NCBI GenBank assembly: GCA_977030845.1
Contig: OZ365114.1
Location: forward strand, 25,420,001 to 25,484,000
Origin: Fimbriosthenelais zetlandica
Taxonomy: Eukaryota
DNA length: 64,000 nucleotides
Reading direction: 5' to 3'
How positions within the stretch are numbered: the first letter of the stretch is position 1; every line of letters begins with the position of its first letter. The translations under genes and the position numbers were made by a program. Positions 31,861 to 57,300 of the stretch are shown here, one piece after another. The notes beneath the pieces were generated by a model. The model saw only the letters and a program-made list of their open reading frames with translations, was not told the origin of the DNA and made no database searches.

Positions 31861-34800
31861 ATTTGATTACAAAACTCTGCTGCACAACTCCACCTTCTGT
31901 CTCGTACCTCGTGGCCGCAGGCTCGGCTCCTTTAGGTAAGCATCTCTCACGCCATCCTCCGCTTTTTACTCCTCACTTTTATTTATCCTCCATCGAGTAC
32001 TTCCTTCAGCATGATGTGACAGCCATTCAGAATCAATTCAGTTTGAACTAAGAGATCTATAGATCTGCTCTATTCAAAATCAGCAAGAATTTCCGAAGGA
32101 AGAAAGGATAATTCTTTATATAACAACGATGTATTTAGAATCTATAAAGCAATTAAGATAAAGTAAACTTTATTCTATACTTGTTGGGTATACATTTTTT
32201 TAGTTAGAATTTTTATAGAGCCTGTTATGGGTGAATACCAGCTCACTCTTGATTACACAAGTTTCTCGTATGATTTTCAGCTGTCTTTTGTTGATGAATT
32301 AGGCCTCTATATATGGGTTTATTTTAAGACATCTGGGGACATGTTTCAGGTTTTTGGAGGCCCTCCAGGCAGCCTGTATACCCGTTCTGCTCAGTAACGG
32401 ATGGGTGCTGCCTTTCCAGGAGGTGGTGGACTGGAACAAGGCTGCCATCTGGGGAGATGAACGCTTACTTCTACAGGTAGGTTACTCCAGCCTCTACTGA
32501 TGCTGGAAATAGTGAACATATTATCACTTACATAAAAACTGTCTTTGATAGATTATGCATCACAGATCTGTACTGTAGATTGTCTGGTCATTTTTCAGAT
32601 TCCCTCCATCGTCCGGTCAACCAGCCATGCTGATATTCTGCTGTTGAGGCAGCAGACACAGTTCCTGTGGCAAACCTATTTTTCTTCTATAGATAAAATT
32701 GTACAAACAACATTAGAGGTGAGTTAATTGAGTGACGTATGCCTACCCACCCTAAAAAAATACAGTATAATATTATTCAATTTACTACTACAAACACATG
32801 AGAATAGTACTTCTCGTAACAAAACAGATAAGTATATATTACTACAAACATTTGAATAGTATTTTATTTATTTTCTTAAAATCGAAATTCCCTGTTTGAC
32901 AGATTGTTAAGGAGCGTGTGGAGTCGCACCTCTCCCGCTCATCATTCGTGTGGAACTCCATCCCTGGAGCTGTAGCCGTGCTTCCTGAATACTCACAAGA
33001 TGTGACCAGGTTCCCCTTCTACATGCGCCAGCTGGGCCTGGAGCCTGCTTCCCATTTCACTGCCATTATTTATACTACTACTCCCACAGTCACACCCTCA
33101 GCTCCCATAGTCCGCCTCATTAGAAATCTTTCCAAATCCAAGCATTTAGATAGGGTAAGTGGATCTTTATCTCTCATGCCACATTGTCTTATAATATATT
33201 AATCTGTAGTAAAAGTGATGCTGTTACAATTATAAGTAAAAGAGATACTGTATATAAAGCTATTAAGCTGGAATTAAAGCGGAACGTGTGAGAGGATAAG
33301 CCTGTAAATATATTCAGCTGAATCCGTTGAGAGAAGGATCAACTTGATGAATCTCATTTTGAGTATAAAATCTCATTTTGAGTATAAAGTTTGTGAGTTA
33401 TTAGATTGTGTCTATCTTTTCAGATATTGATATTATGGCACTGTGACACGCCTCCCCCTATAGATCGACGATGGCCTGTGCCAAGACATGTAACTATGAT
33501 AGTAAAACAAATTAGTGTAAGTATTAAATACATTCACCTCCAAAGAAAATGTTTACATACCTTCTGTTGAATCCTGAATTTCTTCATGTTGACGTGTTTT
33601 ATGGGATTTCTTTCCATCCCATTGAACGTGGTGATGCATTTATTATCTGTAATTACAATATAGGATGTATTTTTTTGTGTTTTGAATGTCTTTCCTTCAG
33701 CTTTTGGTCTGTATAATTTACCTGTTTTTCACCTTGTTTTTACAGACTGTCAGCTAGGTTGTATAATGACGTGTTTTTCACCTTGTTTTTACAGACTTTG
33801 TCAGCTAGGTTGTATCCATATGATGAGATTCATACTGACGCAGTGTTAGGTCTGGATGAGGACGCCATGCTCACCACAGATGAGGTTTGAACATCATATG
33901 CACTTCCTCTTCCTTCCCACGTTTCCGTAGATAAATAAATGAGTAAATCGATTATATTACACAAATATTCCATAGCGATTTTACAAACGGCACTGCTATT
34001 AACAGGTAGATTTCTGTCGTGAGCAATGGCTTGGAGATAATGATTCAAGTAAACTGTTTTTTCTTTATATAATAATAACTATTTCACTGTTGTTTTTCAG
34101 GTTGATTTTGCTTTCTCTGTGTGGCGTAACTTCCCTGACCGGATCGTAGGCTACCCTGCCAGAAGCCACTACTGGGACGAGAGTCGGGCTTGCTGGGGCT
34201 ACACGTCCAAATGGACGAATGATTATTCCATGGTGCTCACCAGTGCAGCGTTCTACCATAGGTTTGTGTTCAGGCCTTCTTTTGAATATCAAATAGTGAA
34301 ATTCTAATAATTTATCAAAGCAACTATGATATAGTAGGCTTACTAATGGTGGAGAACCCCCTTTTAATTTTATCGCGGCCCGACCCAAAATAATTTGTCT
34401 CTTATTGAAGATCAGAAGACAAGGTATAGGTGATTTTTTCTGCCGATTCTTCTGGCTTGATATGGTATATAATATAATGTTTTTAATCTTGCTTTCAGGT
34501 ATTATTTAGACTTATATAGTTCATATTTGGGTCGAGAAACGAGACTGCTGGTCGACTCGACCCAGAACTGTGAAGACATCCTCATGAACTTCCTTATATC
34601 CCACATCACAAAACACCCCCCTATCAAAGTTACCCAGAGGAAAATCTACAAGGATTCCATGTTGCCCGGCAATGACCATTCAGGCGTGTGGACGCAGCCT
34701 GAGCATTTCCGCCAGCGACAAGTGTGTATTAACAAGTTTGTGGATGTCTTCGGCTACATGCCTCTCATCCGCTCTAACCTCCGGCTTGATCCGGTCCTCT

Positions 34801-34862
34801 TCAAAGACCCTGTTTCCATATCTCGGAAAAAGTACCGACAAATAGAGAACGTCTCGAGTTGA
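31861..34862 (+). CDS. EXT1: Exostosin-1 (heparan sulfate polymerase; GT47 C-terminal part + GT64 domain), 5'-partial
   Basis: Exons 31861-31935, 32350-32476, 32599-32718, 32903-33154, 33424-33516, 33795-33884, 34101-34261, 34499-34862; all GT-AG and phase-consistent. Translation includes [31 protein letters not shown] (DxD-like), [44 protein letters not shown] and LDPVLFKD, which are EXT1-diagnostic rather than EXT2. Confidence 0.95.
33723..33815 (+). repeat. Tandem duplication of an EXT1 splice acceptor plus exon start
   Basis: tgtttttcaccttgtttttacag-act(tt)gtcagctaggttgtat occurs at 33723-33764 and 33772-33815. The upstream copy lacks 2 nt. Confidence 0.9.
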
Positions 34863-40044: not shown

Positions 40045-40054
40045 TATATATAAG
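40045..40054 (+). promoter_or_regulatory. TATA box of the protease gene
   Basis: TATATATAAG about 40 nt upstream of the signal-peptide ATG at 40086. Confidence 0.55.
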
Positions 40055-40085: not shown

Positions 40086-43000
40086 ATGCATTGTCTTATT
40101 GTGTTTCTCGTGCTGGGCTCAGCACTGATCGTGGGTGAGTGATTTTATTATAAAAACATTTTATTACATTTACTCCTACTTTACTTATCTAATATTATCT
40201 AAGTGTGTGAATATCCTCGGTCATGAGCCAAATATTATATATCTTAGTGTTTATCATATAGTTGGTTAATTGAATTAAACTGAAACATCTCTTCAAATAT
40301 GACTTTAATTTAAAGCTGGAGTTCCACCGGGATGGCTTCATCACAAGACAAAGCCTGGAAAACCATGGAAAAACTGGAAGCCACACCACAATGTCTCTCA
40401 GCCTGAGGATGACGCATACCCTGGCAAACCCAACATAACCACCTCATCAGAAAATGGCACTGAAGACACGGACCCTTACGGCGGAAACAAATGGAAACAT
40501 CCAAAATGGCCAAAGCCTGAGAAACCTAGCCAAGCTTCCAATGACACAGATGATTCTACTAGTGGGGAAAATGAAGCCAACAAATGGAAACCTCCCAAGA
40601 AAAATAAGAAACATCCAAAATGGCCAAAACCTGATAAACCTAGTCAAGCTGCCATTGACAATGACACAGATGATTCTACAAGTGGAGGAAATGAAGCCAA
40701 CAAATGGAAACCGCCCAAGAAAGATAAGAAACATCCCAAATGGCCAAAACCTGAGAAACCTAACGAAGCTGCCAAGAACAATGGCACAGATGATTCTACT
40801 AGTGGAGAAAATGAAGCCAACAAATGGAAACCACCCAAGAAAGATAAGAAGAAACATCCAAAATGGCCAAAACCTGAGAAGCCTAGCCAAGCTGCCAATG
40901 ATACAGATAATTCTGAAAGTGGGGAAGATGAAGCTAACGATTGGAAACCACCCAAGAAAAATAAGAACAAACATCCAAAATGGCCAAAACCTGAGAAACC
41001 TAGCCAAGCTTCCAATGAAAATGACACAGATGATTCTACAAGTGGGGAAAATGAAGCCAACAAATGGAAACCATCCAAGAAAAATAAGAACAAACATTCA
41101 AATTTGCAAAAACCTGACAAAGCTGCTATTGACAGAGTCAAAGAACATGATAAATTGGTTGCTGTTAAAAGTAAAGAAGTCAACCGAAGAGAAAATAAAA
41201 ATATGGGTTCAGAAGAAGACATGAATGAAGGCAACGTCACCAAACAGTCGGAGGATCATTCTCCAGAACAGGTGAATGGGAGTGAAGAAGGGGACGACTC
41301 TTTGTGGGATCATGCATTTGGTCCACCAAAATCCTTAGATGATGTGGAAGAGGAAGGCAATGAATTAGGAGACAATGGTGAGTACAATTCTGTAACTTGC
41401 ATACTTCTAAGCTAGGCCTTTTATAGGATGTTAGAACTCAGTCATCTTTTGTCCATTACTATATGTGTGGTCATGAAAATGCAAAAATATTTCACATATC
41501 TCGTTTTATCTCTCTCTAATAGGTGGTCAGCAACTAATGAAACGCCATCATTATTCTTCACCGTGTTATTACGTCTATAAATATCAAAAATGTAAGTCAT
41601 CACAGAATACATTTTGAACATTATTCCATTTAATTTTTTCACAAAAACTTATATGAAATTTCTAAATGAACTATCGCCTATTTTTGCAGGCAGATTCTCG
41701 TACTACAAAAAGTACTCGCGTTGTTGTAANNNNNNNNNNNNNNNNNNNNNNNNNNNNNNNNNNNNNNNNNNNNNNNNNNNNNNNNNNNNNNNNNNNNNNN
41801 NNNNNNNNNNNNNNNNNNNNNNNNNNNNNNNNNNNNNNNNNNNNNNNNNNNNNNNNNNNNNNNNNNNNNNNNNNNCCTCCAGTACCACAGCGGGTGCCGC
41901 AGGTACCGGTATGTTATCCACCTTCATACTCTGACTAAATAAATTCCCACATTACCCATATGTAGCTTCTGAAACAATCTAAACCACCTATAACATGTTC
42001 TTCTAGGGAGGTGTGGAGAGACCAGGTCCTATCGTTCAGTATACGAGACCCTCGTAGACCGTATCGTTGGTGGTCAAGAAACCAAACCAAATAAGTACCC
42101 TTTTATGGCATCACTGCGGAGAAGTGATAGTAATGACTTTCAGTTTTGTGGAGGTTCCATAATAAGTGAGAGATGCATCTTGACTGCAGCGCATTGCATG
42201 AAGGACCAGGATGGCAGGTAACAAAGAATATCATAGGCCCATATATCCTCAAATCAATTTAAAATATGCAACAATGTTACAGAGGGGTACAGGTTGCTGG
42301 TAACAAGTTCTTGGTCTGACCTTATCTTCGTTCCAGAGATCTGAGAGCATCTCAAGTAAAAGTTGGCGTCGGTGAACATGACAAATCCAGAGGTACCATG
42401 AAGATGGATGTGGAACAAATAATCTGTCATAACAATTATGGTAAATTAATTTATCACTTTTTTCGTCCACCTTACAATGCAATTTATTTTTCTTGTAGTA
42501 ACAATATTCCACTATTTCCTCTTGCAGACTCAACGAGTTTCAATAATGACATTTGTATTCTGAAGTTGGCAAATTCTCTTAACTTCAATGACCCTAAAAT
42601 AGGAACAGTATGCTTGCCCGAGCAGGACCGAAAGCTCCCATCTGGTGAACGCTGCACTACAATTGGTTGGGGTAGAACACGTAAGTCTTTTTGATAGAAT
42701 CTGAGGGTTATATTTCCCTTTATATTCCAAGACCAGATAACACGGATCAAAGTTTAGGTTTTGATACAACTTTAATTATATTAATATAAGGATAAGAAAT
42801 GTCAGGAGGAAGCACTTTCAACTTTGTACAGGGTATAAAGGACCGGCTAGTGATATTCTCATGGAGGTAGATGTTCCTGTGTTAGACCCTAACACATGCG
42901 CCGACAAGTATAGAAGGTATAAATCATACGAAAAGGTGAGAAACATTCACATTTAATCAGACATCCATTTATTGAGTACCCAATAACGTACAAACCAAAC

Positions 43001-43487
43001 TTGTAAACAAATAAACTGAAAACAAGTTTACCCTCGAAATACATAGGCTAACCGCAATTGTATCAAAAAATCATTATCTTCTCTTATCAAACACAAACAG
43101 GAAAACATGATTTGTGCAGGTTCCGGTTCCGAAAAGAAGGATGGTTGCAATGTAAGTATACGTGTATTACTATATGCTAAAGTATGCAAAAAGTAAGTTA
43201 TTATAAATTGTGATCAATACTTTAATGGATTACAGCACATAAAGTAATTCAAACAAAAAGAAAAGATCTGATAACCATTTGAAAATGTTTAATTGTATAT
43301 ATGTTTGCTCCCTGGTAACCAGGGTGATTCAGGGGGCCCCCTGCTGTGTGATCCTGATAAAACCGGTTACCTGACCGTCTATGGTATCGTTTCTCATGGA
43401 GTGGGATGTGATGGTGACCCTCCAGGGGTCTATACAAACGCCGCCTCCTATGAGACATGGATACAGGGCAATTGTGGCGAGGTTTAA
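40086..43487 (+). CDS. Secreted trypsin-like serine protease (peptidase S1A) with N-terminal Lys/Trp/Pro-rich and acidic tandem-repeat region
   Basis: Exons 40086-40134, 40316-41377, 41690-41908 (spans the N gap), 42007-42217, 42337-42440, 42528-42680, 42832-42935, 43101-43151, 43323-43487; all phase-consistent. Signal peptide [17 protein letters not shown]; activation site R-IVGG (42063); TAAHC, NDI and KDGCN-GDSGGP give an intact His/Asp/Ser triad with Asp189. Confidence 0.92.
40490..41100 (+). repeat. Coding minisatellite, ~111-123 bp unit, about 5 copies plus a partial
   Basis: The unit encodes [14 protein letters not shown](S/A)[21 protein letters not shown](N/D)K. Confidence 0.95.
41730..41875. 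other. Assembly gap (146 N) inside protease exon 3
   Basis: Run of N; the flanking frames join in-frame if the gap length is right. Confidence 0.98.
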
Positions 43488-43651: not shown

Positions 43652-43657
43652 AATAAA
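43652..43657 (+). terminator. Candidate polyadenylation signal of the protease gene
   Basis: First AATAAA after the stop at 43487. Confidence 0.45.
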
Positions 43658-54300: not shown

Positions 54301-57300
54301 TTAAAATGTAACATGGATTAGGAATTGAGTCCTGGAATACTGCAAATTTGTCCTGGATAATCCGGGTAAAATCTACGAAGCCTGTTTTTTGTGCATCAAT
54401 GAAATTATTACCTTATTAGCAATGATCATATAGTAGAATTGAGGTAATATTTTCTCATGTTCCAGCCACAAGCCATCGACTCCCTGCTCCGCTCCACCAT
54501 GGGAGACTTCCTGGAGGCTCTCCATGATACAGACCTCAACGTACGGCGGGTGGCTCTAGTGGCCTTCAACTCAGCCGCTCACAATAAACCAGCCCTGGTC
54601 CGTGACCTGCTGGTGGCGGTCCTACCACACCTCTACAGCGAGACCAAAGTTAGGGTAAGCTACCCCCAATTTGATGTCCCTTCAGTATTCTTTTTCTGTG
54701 AAATTGACGTATTCTTTTTCTGTAAAATTGACTATCTCCAGTATTATTTTTCTATAAAATTGGCTATTATTTTTCTGTGAAATTGACATCTTCAGTATTT
54801 ATTTTCTGTGAAATTGATTATCTGTACTTCTTATGATCAGGTATGAAGTTTTTAGTAACAAAATCCAGAAGAAATTTATTGAGTTTGTAATAAGTATTAG
54901 GCTATTGACAAATGCATTGTTCACTAAATATAATCCATTTCTGATGACAGAAAGAACTAATCAGAGAGGTTGAAATGGGCCCATTCAAACACACAGTCGA
55001 TGATGGCTTGGATATCAGAAAGGTGGGTGCTTTTATTCAATCTAAAAATTACATAGTTTGGTGTGATCTTCTATTTATCTGGTACCTATTTGAACAAAAA
55101 TATTTCAATTATAGAATAACCAATATCGAACAAAACTAAGACGTGTAATAATGATTGAGTAAATCTGTCCCTGGAGTTTATATTGTAACGTTTTTCATTG
55201 TTGTAATTTCAGGCGGCCTTTGAGTGCATGTACACGTTACTCGACTCATGTTTGGACCGGATTGACATCTTTGAGTTCCTCAAGCATGTAGAGGAGGGTC
55301 TTAACGATCATTACGACATTAAGATGCTTACATACCTGATGCTCGTACGACTGGCGCATCTCTGTCCTAACGCTGTCTTACAACGTGAGTATTATTATTG
55401 TATCATTTTATTCATACACTGTACATTTACATTGAGATAAGTATATCGCATCATTCTACCATTAAGGGGCTATCTCAAAAGTTAGCAAGTTTTTTTTCTC
55501 TAAATTTAAGTCTTTAATTTGGAGCCAGACCACCACCCCACCTCCAATTTTAAAGTGTGAAAAATAATGGCTTGAATCCTGGTAACTGATATCCATGCGG
55601 TTTTTCAAAAATTTAAGTGGGCCTCGGACCCCCACCTACTGTTGTAAATAAATTGAATTTAGAAAGGACTTTTGAGGAACAATTTACGCATTGAGATTTG
55701 CAGAAATGGGGTTTTTGTTAACGTCAATGCTGTTATTCGTTCCGTTCAGATTTGGATCATATCGTGGAGCCGCTGCGGGCCACGTGCACAACTAAAGTTA
55801 AAGCCAACTCTGTGAAACAAGAGTTTGAGAAACAAGATGAGCTGAAGAGGTCTGCCCTCCGCGCAGTGGCTGCCCTCCTACACATCCCAGAAGCAGGTGA
55901 GAAATATATTCTATTAAAAATATTATGTTACTTTCAAGTGTTTGGTTTTTTTTTATTACTTTTTGGAAGTACTGTCTTGGGGCCAGGCCAAGTGGTAACG
56001 GAGGGACACTTTTGCTGTATTTTGCCCTAGTACTCATGTGCTATTCAAGATTGAGTAAAATAACAACTGGTATTATATAAAGGCTACCTTAGACTATAAA
56101 CTCAGGGAAAAAAGTTTGGAGCCAAACAACTTCTTGTGGGTGAAATTTGTAAAAAACAGTGTGGTAACGGAGGGACGCAAAATTAACGTCTATTTTTTGC
56201 ACTTTTTTGAGACCTGCATATCATACGGTTCCTGAGGTTCAAATCATTATTTATCTCTTTCACAATGTGCTATTACTATTTAAATATGAACATACAAAAT
56301 TGCAAGCCAGTAGGGCTTCTCAATTTTTATGGAGCAGTATTTAAAGAGTGATGGTCATGGTAACGGAGGGACATTGGCAAATGGTAACGGAGGGACACAT
56401 TTTCACTATGTCTATTCAGGCAGCCCTTATACATCATATACCAATTGTTTGCTCAATTGATATGTTTTAGTGTATTTTGGCAACAGTGGAACACCTTTCA
56501 CATTATTCCAAGGGTTTTATGCAGCTTTAAATTAAGCCTGGGCCACTTCAAATATCTGAAGTTAACAATTGGTGAAAAATGATGCAATGTGAAAAAATGT
56601 TCCAGTGTAACCTTAAATTCTTTCACAAAATGAACTCTAAATTAATCATATAGTTTTATTTCAAATCCCAATTCAATTTAATTACATCATGGTATGAAAA
56701 GCACACACTTAAATAACCTTTTGATTCCTTAAACTGAACCTTCCATTTTTCAGTATATTTCCAAGTAAAAATTACAGAAAATTGCTTAATTCATAACAGA
56801 AAATGTCTTGAGGAGGTGTAATTTTGGTGGATTACATGCAAAAACCTATGTTGATTCAGCTTAGTACTCATCGATCAAACAGAGCAGCTCATCAAAATAC
56901 CAAATTTTGATGGAAATTGCAAAATCATCTACCTTTGTATTTGTTGAAAATTTTGTGAATTTGACTATCTGGTGTCAGTGACTGAAAGTCCATGAAATTA
57001 TTTTCAGTCTATTAGATCTCACTTTAGTACAGTTCAATGAATTTCTGCGTTATGGTGGCAAAATCCTCAGCACTTAGTTTCAGCAGGTTTGTCCTACTTG
57101 ACGATGATGGGCAGGAGCATCAACTTCGAGGAACAACTGATGTGTTAAGATTTATATTACTGACCCAAGGAAGCCCTTTCTTGTTTGGAAATTTTGGTTT
57201 TATTGAATCCAATGCAAGTGATTCATTTTAAACTAGAGGCCTTCTTTAGCTAGGCATAATGAAGCCATGCAAAGTTTTTCTTCTCATACTATAGAATCCA

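What the first reader, a model, noticed from the sequence alone, without database searches (positions are those of the whole stretch)
40316..41377. Trypsin-like protease with a large block-polyampholyte Lys/Trp/Pro repeat pro-region
Seen: after the signal peptide, a ~354-aa exon encodes about five repeats alternating a basic aromatic block ([20 protein letters not shown]) with an acidic block carrying N-glycosylation sequons and Ser-Gly ([18 protein letters not shown]), followed by an acidic tail. The ORF track shows the wrong frames for most of this exon. Known: S1A pro-regions are usually CLIP, CUB, LDLa, SRCR, kringle or mucin-like; I do not recognise this repeat. Inference: charge-patterned Lys/Trp blocks could drive coacervation, cation-pi adhesion, or binding to polyanions, minerals or membranes, tethering or storing the zymogen in a secreted matrix (mucus, tube, cocoon, egg coat, venom). 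It could also release cationic peptides on cleavage. Adjacency to the heparan sulfate polymerase gene is intriguing but may be chance.
Basis: partly seen in the sequence, partly recalled or inferred. Interest (0 to 1): 0.75.

Follow-up and report, generated by a model that had tools for sequence, protein, structure and literature searches.

The report
Trypsin-like protease with orphan charged repeat arm
This animal gene very probably encodes a secreted trypsin-like enzyme with a long, floppy, sugar-decorated arm of alternating positive and negative 40-residue repeats; the arm matches nothing in the databases, but proteases with low-complexity arms are already known, and no RNA or related species could be examined.

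Summary
Window 40316-41377 is a 1062-nt exon with one stop-free frame. It encodes four full 39-41-aa units, a truncated first unit and a degenerate last one. Each unit alternates a basic block ([20 protein letters not shown]) with an acidic block carrying N-x-T and Ser-Gly. With nine other GT-AG exons it gives a 726-aa model: signal peptide, repeat region, a partly masked Tyr/Lys/Cys-rich linker, and an intact S1A protease (R|IVGG, His/Asp/Ser, Asp189, Cys122).

The repeat is single-copy in its genome. It has no Pfam, PDB or Atlas match and no hit among 1.84 billion representative proteins. AlphaFold predicts no fold apart from one helix. Charge segregation exceeds all 300 shuffles.

Because Cys122 and a pro-region Cys are both present, the repeat probably stays disulfide-linked after activation. 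It would then be a non-catalytic arm, not a discarded pro-peptide.

Function is inferred only. My best guess is a multivalent tether to an anionic matrix or surface. Coacervation, glycosaminoglycan attachment and peptide release remain untested.

No sequencing run was listed. The protein collection holds no close relative of this genome. So splicing, expression and conservation are unverified.

Verdict: a new variant of a known kind (mosaic S1A protease with a low-complexity region), of moderate interest.

The parts
40047..40053 (+). TATA box (TATATAA), 39 nt before the start codon
   Evidence: Pattern scan and sequence. Its promoter role is inferred.
40086..40134 (+). Exon 1: start codon and hydrophobic signal peptide ([16 protein letters not shown]), ending in phase 1
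   Evidence: The signal peptide was judged by eye, not with a predictor.
40316..41377 (+). Exon 2 (phase 1-1): 354-aa repeat region, made of a pre-repeat, the tandem units and an acidic tail
   Evidence: it is the only stop-free frame, with no internal GTRAG donor or pyrimidine-rich acceptor.
40486..41058 (+). Repeat core: units 1-5 (31, 40, 40, 39 and 41 aa). Full units are 88-93% identical in DNA.
   Evidence: All inter-unit indels are multiples of 3.
41059..41178 (+). Degenerate sixth unit, running into the only predicted helix
   Evidence: predicts a helix at residues 268-291 of the exon translation.
41179..41377 (+). Acidic Glu/Asp/Asn/Ser-rich tail of exon 2
41523..41591 (+). Exon 3 (phase 1-1): start of the Tyr/Lys/Cys-rich linker
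   Evidence: No Pfam hit.
41690..41902 (+). Exon 4 (phase 1-1): the linker continues. It holds the 146-N block at 41730-41875, across which the frame is kept.
   Evidence: The masked letters were not sought.
42007..42217 (+). Exon 5: pro-region Cys (RCGE), activation site VDR|IVGG, and His57 (TAAHC)
   Evidence: PF00089, E 5.8e-14; 339 PDB S1 chains.
42337..42440 (+). Exon 6 of the protease domain
42528..42680 (+). Exon 7: Asp102 (NNDICIL), Cys122 (TVCLP) and Cys136
   Evidence: (PF00089, E 1.4e-8).
42832..42935 (+). Exon 8 of the protease domain
43101..43151 (+). Exon 9: Asp189 (KKDGCN), the S1 pocket residue
43323..43487 (+). Exon 10: GDSGGP (Ser195), SHGVGC, Gly226 and the stop codon
   Evidence: (PF00089, E 9.6e-10).
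43652..43657 (+). First AATAAA after the stop codon, a candidate poly(A) signal

Best explanation
A real, single-copy, lineage-restricted gene for a secreted mosaic trypsin-like (S1A) zymogen of about 726 aa.

Shown:
- Ten exons with canonical splice sites join a signal peptide, a 354-aa repeat region, a Tyr/Lys/Cys-rich linker and a catalytically complete protease.
- The repeat region arose by local tandem duplication of a 120-nt unit.
- It is an N-glycosylation-rich block polyampholyte with no detectable relative.
- It is predicted to lack a fold apart from one helix.

Inferred from S1A knowledge:
- A trypsin-like protease, possibly the enzyme itself, cleaves at Arg|IVGG.
- The N-terminal chain stays attached through a Cys(pro-region)-Cys122 disulfide.
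- The repeat is therefore a permanent non-catalytic arm.

Inferred from composition only:
- The invariant Lys/Trp/Pro blocks act as multivalent sticky segments for an anionic extracellular partner, such as a sulfated or acidic glycan matrix, mucus, an egg coat or a microbial surface.
- The glycosylated acidic blocks act as spacers and internal counter-ions that keep the protein soluble.
- The arm thereby localises or concentrates the protease.
For: Gene model:
- All nine introns are GT-AG, 87-181 nt long and AT-rich; the assembled CDS is 2181 nt and in frame.
- There is a TATA box 39 nt before the ATG and an AATAAA 165 nt after the stop.
- Only one frame of exon 2 is open, and it is the frame that links exon 1 to exon 3.

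Coding constraint on the repeat:
- Inter-unit indels are 24, 6, 3, 3 and 6 nt.
- pN/pS (nonsynonymous over synonymous difference per site) is 0.33 in frame, against 0.77 and 2.5 in the shifted frames.
- The basic block is nearly invariant, and changes cluster in the acidic block.

Protease domain:
- PF00089 matches three exon pieces, and 339 PDB S1 chains match the IVGG exon.
- TAAHC, NNDICIL, GDSGGP, Asp189, Gly216, Gly226 and Cys122 are read directly from the translation.

Disorder and orphan status:
- AlphaFold gives mean pLDDT 50, pTM 0.19 and no secondary structure except one helix.
- There is no Pfam, PDB or Atlas hit.
- There are 0 hits among 1.84 billion representatives, and 0 of 1662 word-sharing candidates score at E<=10.
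- The repeat is single-copy at both protein and DNA level in the 447-Mb genome.

Charge pattern: kappa is 0.29, against 0.15 +/- 0.03 in shuffles.

Precedent for binding arms: the Pro-rich light chain of spermosin is proposed to bind an egg-coat component (PMC11673157).
Against: - No transcript evidence: no sequencing run was listed.
- Exon 2 is a symmetric phase 1-1 exon. Skipping it would keep the frame, so the repeat-bearing form may be a minor isoform.
- Retention of intron 2 would instead give a 384-aa repeat protein with no protease.
- The selection signal is weak. The third-position excess is not significant on its own (P=0.12), and the pairwise comparisons are not independent.
- 46 Lys/Arg residues in the arm are not followed by Pro. 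An active trypsin-like domain could degrade its own arm, which argues against a stable tether unless glycans protect it or the specificity is narrow.
- No binding partner is identified.
- Conservation in other species could not be assessed, because the collection holds no close relative. The best EXT1-exon match on a usable contig is 72-73% identical.
Confidence: 0.55

Rival explanations
1. Near-neutral coding minisatellite. The repeat is a young tandem expansion tolerated in a disordered spacer between the signal peptide and the functional part of the zymogen. It would have no specific binding role, might vary in copy number, and might often be skipped as a phase 1-1 cassette.
For: - The units are 88-93% identical in DNA, and the array has a truncated and a degenerate end unit, as expected of local duplication.
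- No homologue was found anywhere.
- The exon is symmetric, phase 1-1.
- Other S1A genes in the same genome appear to carry unrelated low-complexity exons, such as an (SGS)n frame upstream of a paralogue.
- The third-position excess is not significant.
Against: - The frame is kept over 354 codons, and every indel is a multiple of 3.
- pN/pS is 0.33 in frame, against 0.77 and 2.5 off frame.
- The 20-residue basic block is almost invariant while the acidic block varies, which suggests constraint on the Lys/Trp/Pro block.
- Synonymous divergence of about 0.2 between units shows the array is not very recent.
Confidence: 0.22
2. Self-coacervating storage or adhesive form. The alternating cationic-aromatic and anionic blocks would drive phase separation or cation-pi adhesion. 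The zymogen would then be packed into secretory granules or laid down in a secreted matrix such as mucus, a tube, a cocoon or an egg coat.
For: - It is a strong, near-neutral polyampholyte with segregated charge blocks (kappa 0.29, above all 300 shuffles).
- The repeat core has 10 Trp, 42 Lys and 28 Pro.
- It is predicted to be disordered.
- The adjoining visible linker is Tyr/Lys/Cys-rich. From my own knowledge, that composition recalls interfacial adhesive proteins of mussels and tube worms.
Against: - There is no experimental or expression evidence.
- A kappa of 0.29 is moderate segregation.
- Heavy N-glycosylation of the acidic blocks would favour solubility.
- At high ionic strength such as sea water, purely electrostatic coacervation is weakened (own knowledge).
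- The tissue of expression and the organism are unknown.
Confidence: 0.1
3. Part-time proteoglycan or phosphoprotein. The five Ser-Gly sites in acidic context ([10 protein letters not shown]) would be xylosylated and carry glycosaminoglycan chains, or be phosphorylated at S-x-E. The arm would then be an anionic polymer with built-in glycan-binding Lys blocks, a serglycin-plus-protease store in one chain.
For: - There are five Ser-Gly sites, each flanked by Asp/Glu clusters, and four are also S-G-E.
- From my own knowledge, acidic residues around Ser-Gly favour xylosyltransferase, and S-x-E is the Fam20C-type motif.
- The basic blocks resemble heparin-binding clusters.
- EXT1 lies 5.2 kb upstream.
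Against: - Motif matches of this kind are weakly predictive.
- The preferred Gly before the Ser, and the SGxG form, are absent in four of the five units.
- Adjacency to EXT1 is not evidence, because EXT1 is a housekeeping Golgi enzyme.
- Nothing was tested.
Confidence: 0.07
4. Precursor of cationic Lys/Trp/Pro peptides, antimicrobial or signalling, released when the arm is cut by the attached protease or another one.
For: - The repeat gives 4-5 near-identical cationic Trp/Pro-rich blocks separated by acidic spacers, as in some multi-copy peptide precursors.
- 46 Lys/Arg residues are not followed by Pro, and there are 10 dibasic pairs.
Against: - There are no clean dibasic or furin-type sites at the block boundaries. 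The cleavable Lys residues lie inside the basic blocks, so tryptic cutting would shred the cationic peptides themselves.
- No related peptide family was found.
Confidence: 0.04
5. Not a functional gene as modelled. It could be a pseudogene, an assembly artefact, or two separate genes: a repeat protein ending in intron 2, and a protease with another first exon.
For: - There are no RNA data.
- A 146-N block interrupts exon 4.
- No self-hit or orthologue was found in the protein collections.
Against: - The 726-codon reading is uninterrupted, with consensus splice sites and intact catalytic and disulfide residues.
- The frame is kept across the N block.
- Exon 3 offers no signal peptide for a separate protease gene.
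- There is no AATAAA in intron 2 (sequence).
Confidence: 0.04

Closest known systems
Mosaic chymotrypsin-fold (MEROPS S1A) zymogens with a disulfide-tethered non-catalytic chain, such as clip-domain proteases, factor XII, plasma kallikrein and TMPRSS enzymes
   Same: Secreted; activation by cleavage at Arg|IVGG; His57/Asp102/Ser195; Asp189 trypsin-like pocket; Cys122 together with a pro-region Cys; N-terminal modules encoded on phase 1-1 exons.
   Different: The non-catalytic chain is dominated by a 354-aa disordered tandem repeat that matches no domain. No clip, CUB, LDLa, SRCR or kringle domain was detected in the visible sequence. Part of the linker is masked.
Insect serine proteases with low-complexity regions, such as Drosophila Tequila and Anopheles SP22D (PMC1761132)
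   Same: S1A proteases whose N-terminal regions include His- and Pro-rich stretches and short tandem repeats (NGGYQPP). 'LC' and 'XY-rich' regions are routine categories in insect protease catalogues.
   Different: Those repeats are short, sit among folded chitin-binding, SRCR and LDLa domains, and are not charge-alternating. Here the repeat is 40 aa, Lys/Trp/Pro plus acidic, and forms the bulk of the arm. There is no sequence similarity.
Neurotrypsin (PRSS12) N-terminal proline-rich region (PMC9616769)
   Same: A Pro-rich N-terminal segment ahead of the other modules of a secreted trypsin-like protease.
   Different: In neurotrypsin it is short and followed by kringle and SRCR domains. It has no tandem 40-aa units, no acidic glyco-blocks and no sequence similarity.
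[quoted passage not shown]
   Same: A trypsin-like protease whose non-catalytic light chain carries a Pro-rich region proposed to bind an egg-coat-associated protein, so it acts as a tether rather than a discarded pro-peptide.
   Different: Different lineage and sequence. It is not a polyampholyte repeat, and nothing here points to sperm expression.
Oppositely charged secreted material proteins (sandcastle-worm cement, mussel foot proteins) and serglycin-protease granule storage; all from my own knowledge, not tested
   Same: Use of Lys-plus-aromatic blocks and polyanionic partners for condensation, adhesion or storage of secreted proteins.
   Different: Those systems use separate polycation and polyanion molecules, and Tyr/DOPA rather than Trp. 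None is fused to a protease. No homology was found.

Membership tests
Peptidase family S1A (Pfam PF00089, Trypsin) | Sequence match to the family profile | tested here: met
   Three exon pieces match PF00089 at E 5.8e-14, 1.4e-8 and 9.6e-10. Together they cover profile positions 1-46, 85-130 and 178-220. The IVGG exon matches 339 PDB S1 chains.
Peptidase family S1A (active enzyme, not a protease homologue) | Catalytic triad His57, Asp102, Ser195 in the TAAHC, DI(A/C)L and GDSGGP motifs | tested here: met
   TAAHC, NNDICIL and GDSGGP are all present in the spliced translation.
Peptidase family S1A, trypsin-like specificity | Asp189 at the base of S1, with Gly216 and Gly226 | tested here: met
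   KKDGCNGDSGGP places Asp six residues before Ser195. SHGVGC and PGVYT supply Gly216 and Gly226. Residues were numbered by motif, not by structural alignment.
Two-chain S1A zymogens (tethered heavy chain) | Arg/Lys|I-V-G-G activation site, plus Cys122 paired with a pro-region Cys | tested here: inconclusive
   VDR|IVGG, TVCLP (Cys122) and RCGE 17 residues before the cleavage site are all present. The disulfide itself cannot be shown from sequence, and the spliced domain could not be submitted for folding.
Clip-domain serine proteases | A 37-55-aa clip domain with six conserved Cys between the signal peptide and the protease | tested here: inconclusive
   No Pfam hit on the visible linker. The visible part has only four Cys (C-x8-C-x10-CC), and 49 codons are masked and were not sought.
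Known repeat or domain families for the exon-2 region (any Pfam, PDB or Atlas cluster) | Detectable sequence or feature similarity | tested here: not met
   0 Pfam families at E<=1. 0 PDB sequences at E<=1. No usable Atlas hit. 0 of 1.84 billion representatives at E<=0.001. 0 of 1662 candidates at E<=10.
Intrinsically disordered block polyampholyte | High fraction of charged residues, near-zero net charge, segregated charge blocks and no predicted fold | tested here: met
   Fraction of charged residues 0.37-0.40; net charge per residue -0.003 to +0.04; kappa 0.29 against 0.15 +/- 0.03 for shuffles, with 0 of 300 reaching it. Mean pLDDT 50 and one helix only, from a single-sequence AlphaFold run.
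Proteoglycan core protein | Ser-Gly attachment sites flanked by acidic residues that actually carry glycosaminoglycan | not testable with these tools
   Five acidic Ser-Gly motifs are present. Whether they are occupied needs biochemistry.

The most novel reading that the evidence does not exclude
The arm is a self-contained condensation or attachment device. Lys/Trp/Pro blocks and glycosylated acidic blocks, possibly phosphorylated or glycosaminoglycan-bearing, would let the zymogen phase-separate or coat an anionic matrix by itself. A protease would then be stored in or embedded into a secreted material and switched on there. Binding to polyanions might itself trigger auto-activation, in the manner of contact activation.
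Probability: 0.12. Interest if true: 0.7.

Novelty: new variant of a known kind. Interest (0 to 1): 0.35.

Why it matters
If the arm is expressed and functional, it would be a natural case of an enzyme fused to a single-chain charge-patterned Lys/Trp polyampholyte. That would interest people who study secreted condensates, bio-adhesives, and the localisation of extracellular proteases.

It would also show how a phase 1-1 exon made by minisatellite expansion can give an old enzyme fold a new non-catalytic module.

As it stands, this is a well-supported gene model with an orphan disordered repeat and no functional data. Similar low-complexity additions to S1A proteases are common in invertebrates.

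Tried and rejected
- RNA evidence: two run searches, one on the whole gene and one on exon 2 alone, listed no run.
- Homologues of the repeat: Pfam, PDB, Atlas, the exhaustive phmmer search and the word-index search at E<=10 were all blank.
- Orthologues through the protease domain: the 69-aa IVGG exon found no candidate within the length filter.
- I tried to build a profile by aligning the six exon pieces to an intronless paralogue (L010). MAFFT misplaced the fragments, so I did not search with it.
- The spliced protease domain has no reference, and I did not type it. Full-length homology search and folding of the catalytic domain were therefore left out.
- Synteny through the EXT1 last exon:
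  - The best relatives are 81% identical (on a 540-nt contig) and 72-73% identical.
  - The 148-kb contig gave no DNA. Its gene calls show only two short ORFs (58 and 73 aa) in the roughly 5 kb after that exon, not the full 10 kb requested.
  - The 6-kb contig ends 4.3 kb after the exon and has no protease-like sequence.
  - Both results are inconclusive.
- Dispersed satellite or transposon origin: rejected, because the 240-nt repeat DNA matches only this locus.
- Recent gene family: rejected, because the nearest paralogues are 40-54% identical in the protease exons and share no N-terminal similarity.
- Off-frame ORFs (256 aa on the + strand; 216 and 199 aa on the - strand): rejected as by-products of the repeat, since they do not connect splice sites and show no coding-type substitution pattern.
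- The organism was not identified.
Full report
**What is there**

The sequence around 40316-41377 reads as a eukaryotic gene with short introns. I assembled ten + strand exons: 40086-40134, 40316-41377, 41523-41591, 41690-41902, 42007-42217, 42337-42440, 42528-42680, 42832-42935, 43101-43151 and 43323-43487. All nine introns are GT-AG, 87-181 nt long and AT-rich. The joined CDS is 2181 nt, in frame, and encodes 726 aa. A TATATAA box lies 39 nt before the ATG, and the first AATAAA lies 165 nt after the stop.

Exon 1 encodes a hydrophobic signal-type leader, [17 protein letters not shown] judged this by eye and did not run a signal-peptide predictor.

**The reported exon**

The frame starting at 40318 has no stop across the exon. 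The other two + frames have 5 and 50 stops. The exon has no internal GT(A/G)AG donor and no pyrimidine-rich acceptor, and its longest pyrimidine run is 6 nt.

The bacterial-style ORF list misses this frame because it holds no ATG, GTG or TTG before 41104. Instead it lists off-frame ORFs of 256, 216 and 199 aa that the repeat keeps open.

**The repeat**

- Tandem Repeats Finder gives a 120-nt unit in 5.2 copies, 85% matching.
- At protein level there is a truncated unit of 31 aa, four full units of 40, 40, 39 and 41 aa, and a degenerate sixth unit.
- The sixth unit runs into the only predicted helix and then an acidic tail.
- The full units are 88-93% identical in DNA and 84-89% in protein.
- The basic block [17 protein letters not shown] is almost invariant, and changes cluster in the acidic block.

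**Is it coding?**

All inter-unit indels are multiples of three (24, 6, 3, 3 and 6 nt). Summed pairwise pN/pS is 0.33 in the proposed frame, against 0.77 and 2.5 in the shifted frames. The excess of third-position changes (10 of 21 variable sites) is not significant alone (P=0.12). The selection signal is therefore suggestive, not proof.

**Composition**

- The repeat core holds 42 Lys, 28 Pro, 10 Trp, 35 Asp+Glu and 21 Asn, with only one Ile, Leu, Val, Met, Phe or Cys residue in 191.
- The fraction of charged residues is 0.40 and the net charge is near zero.
- Charge segregation (kappa 0.29) exceeds all 300 shuffles, which average 0.15 +/- 0.03.
- The exon has ten N-x-S/T sequons, five Ser-Gly sites all in acidic context, and one W-x-x-W.

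**Protease part**

Pfam Trypsin (PF00089) matches three exon pieces. The IVGG exon matches 339 PDB S1 chains, and the best is earthworm fibrinolytic enzyme component B, 1ym0.

The translation shows VDR|IVGG, TAAHC, NNDICIL and GDSGGP. It also shows Asp189 (KKDGCNGDSGGP), SHGVGC and PGVYT. This is a catalytically complete enzyme with trypsin-like specificity.

It also has TVCLP (Cys122) and a Cys in RCGE, 17 residues before the cleavage site. In S1A zymogens with that pair, the N-terminal chain normally stays disulfide-bound after activation (established family knowledge; not tested here). 'Pro-region' is therefore probably a misnomer, and the repeat would be a permanent non-catalytic arm.

**Linker and masked block**

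Between the repeat and the protease lie two phase 1-1 exons that encode a Tyr/Lys/Cys-rich linker. A 146-N block sits at 41730-41875. The frame is kept across it, since 41728 to 41878 is 150 nt. I did not look for the masked letters. The visible part has no Pfam hit, so the domain type is unknown.

**Uniqueness**

- The repeat exon is single-copy in the 447-Mb genome at protein level and at DNA level. It is not a dispersed satellite or transposon.
- The protease has no close paralogue. The best matches are 40-54% identical in individual exons and share no N-terminal similarity.
- Outside the genome, exon 2 has no Pfam, PDB or Atlas match.
- It has no hit at E<=0.001 among 1.84 billion representative proteins read exhaustively.
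- None of 1662 word-sharing candidates scores at E<=10.
- AlphaFold on the single sequence gives mean pLDDT 50, pTM 0.19 and one helix, consistent with disorder.

**Limits**

- No sequencing run was listed, so neither splicing nor expression is verified.
- The protein collection seems to hold no close relative of this genome. The conserved last EXT1 exon (34527-34862) finds at best 81% identity on a 540-nt contig and 72-73% on longer ones.
- The two syntenic look-ups were uninformative. 'No homologue' therefore means no recognisable relative in what is available, not proof of recent origin.
- The spliced catalytic domain has no reference and I did not type it, so it was neither searched full-length nor folded.
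- An attempt to align the exon pieces to an intronless paralogue for a profile search failed.

**Interpretation**

The gene model and the nature of the arm are well supported. The function is inference from composition. I favour a multivalent electrostatic and cation-pi tether to an anionic extracellular partner, with the glycosylated acidic blocks as spacers and counter-ions.

One caveat is that 46 Lys/Arg residues in the arm are not followed by Pro, so the active enzyme might cut its own arm. Rival readings are scored in the report sections: a near-neutral coding minisatellite or skippable cassette, a self-coacervating storage or adhesive form, a part-time proteoglycan or phosphoprotein, a peptide precursor, and a mis-modelled gene.

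EXT1 does lie 5.2 kb upstream on the same strand, but nothing links the two genes functionally.

**Comparison with known systems**

S1A proteases with low-complexity or Pro-rich non-catalytic regions are already described:
- Neurotrypsin starts with a Pro-rich region (PMC9616769).
- The Pro-rich light chain of ascidian spermosin is proposed to bind an egg-coat component (PMC11673157).
- In this same genome, another S1A gene appears to have an (SGS)n frame just upstream of its IVGG exon.

What is new here is the particular 40-aa charge-alternating Lys/Trp/Pro repeat and its dominance of the arm. I class it as a new variant of a known kind, of moderate interest.

Noticed in passing
window 41730-41875: A 146-N block lies inside predicted exon 4, and the reading frame is kept across it (150 nt between codon starts). 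That fits a true-length mask rather than an arbitrary gap. The visible flank ([23 protein letters not shown]) is strikingly Tyr/Lys/Cys-rich. The letters were not sought.
   Followed up: partly
window 34527-34862 (+): Last coding exon of EXT1 (Glyco_transf_64). Database relatives reach only 81% identity on a 540-nt contig and 72-73% on longer contigs. The protein collection therefore seems to lack close relatives of this genome.
   Followed up: partly
window 54457-54780 (+): An open frame reading [34 protein letters not shown]... looks like a CAND1 exon. I recognised it by eye and did not test it.
   Followed up: no
L021 (G000:C38:3764000-3773999), minus strand, about 830 nt upstream of the IVGG exon at 3768412-3768591: A 115-aa open frame made almost entirely of (SGS)n lies just upstream of another trypsin-like gene's IVGG exon. 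This suggests a second S1A gene with a low-complexity N-terminal exon in this genome. Whether it is spliced into that gene was not checked.
   Followed up: partly
L020 (G000:C37:16486000-16495999), minus strand: The nearest paralogue of the protease (41-53% identical in its exons) is preceded by three CUB-like open frames, two of which end in Thr-rich, mucin-like stretches.
   Followed up: no
L010 1480-2310 (-) = G000:C25:11156216-11156905; L009 = G000:C13:7761929-7762591: Intronless trypsin genes. L010 covers the full Pfam Trypsin domain (positions 1-220) in one open frame, and L009 covers positions 14-220.
   Followed up: no
window 40447-41243, both strands: Three long off-frame ORFs (256 aa on the + strand; 216 and 199 aa on the - strand) overlap the repeat exon. 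They are by-products of the repeat and not genes.
   Followed up: yes
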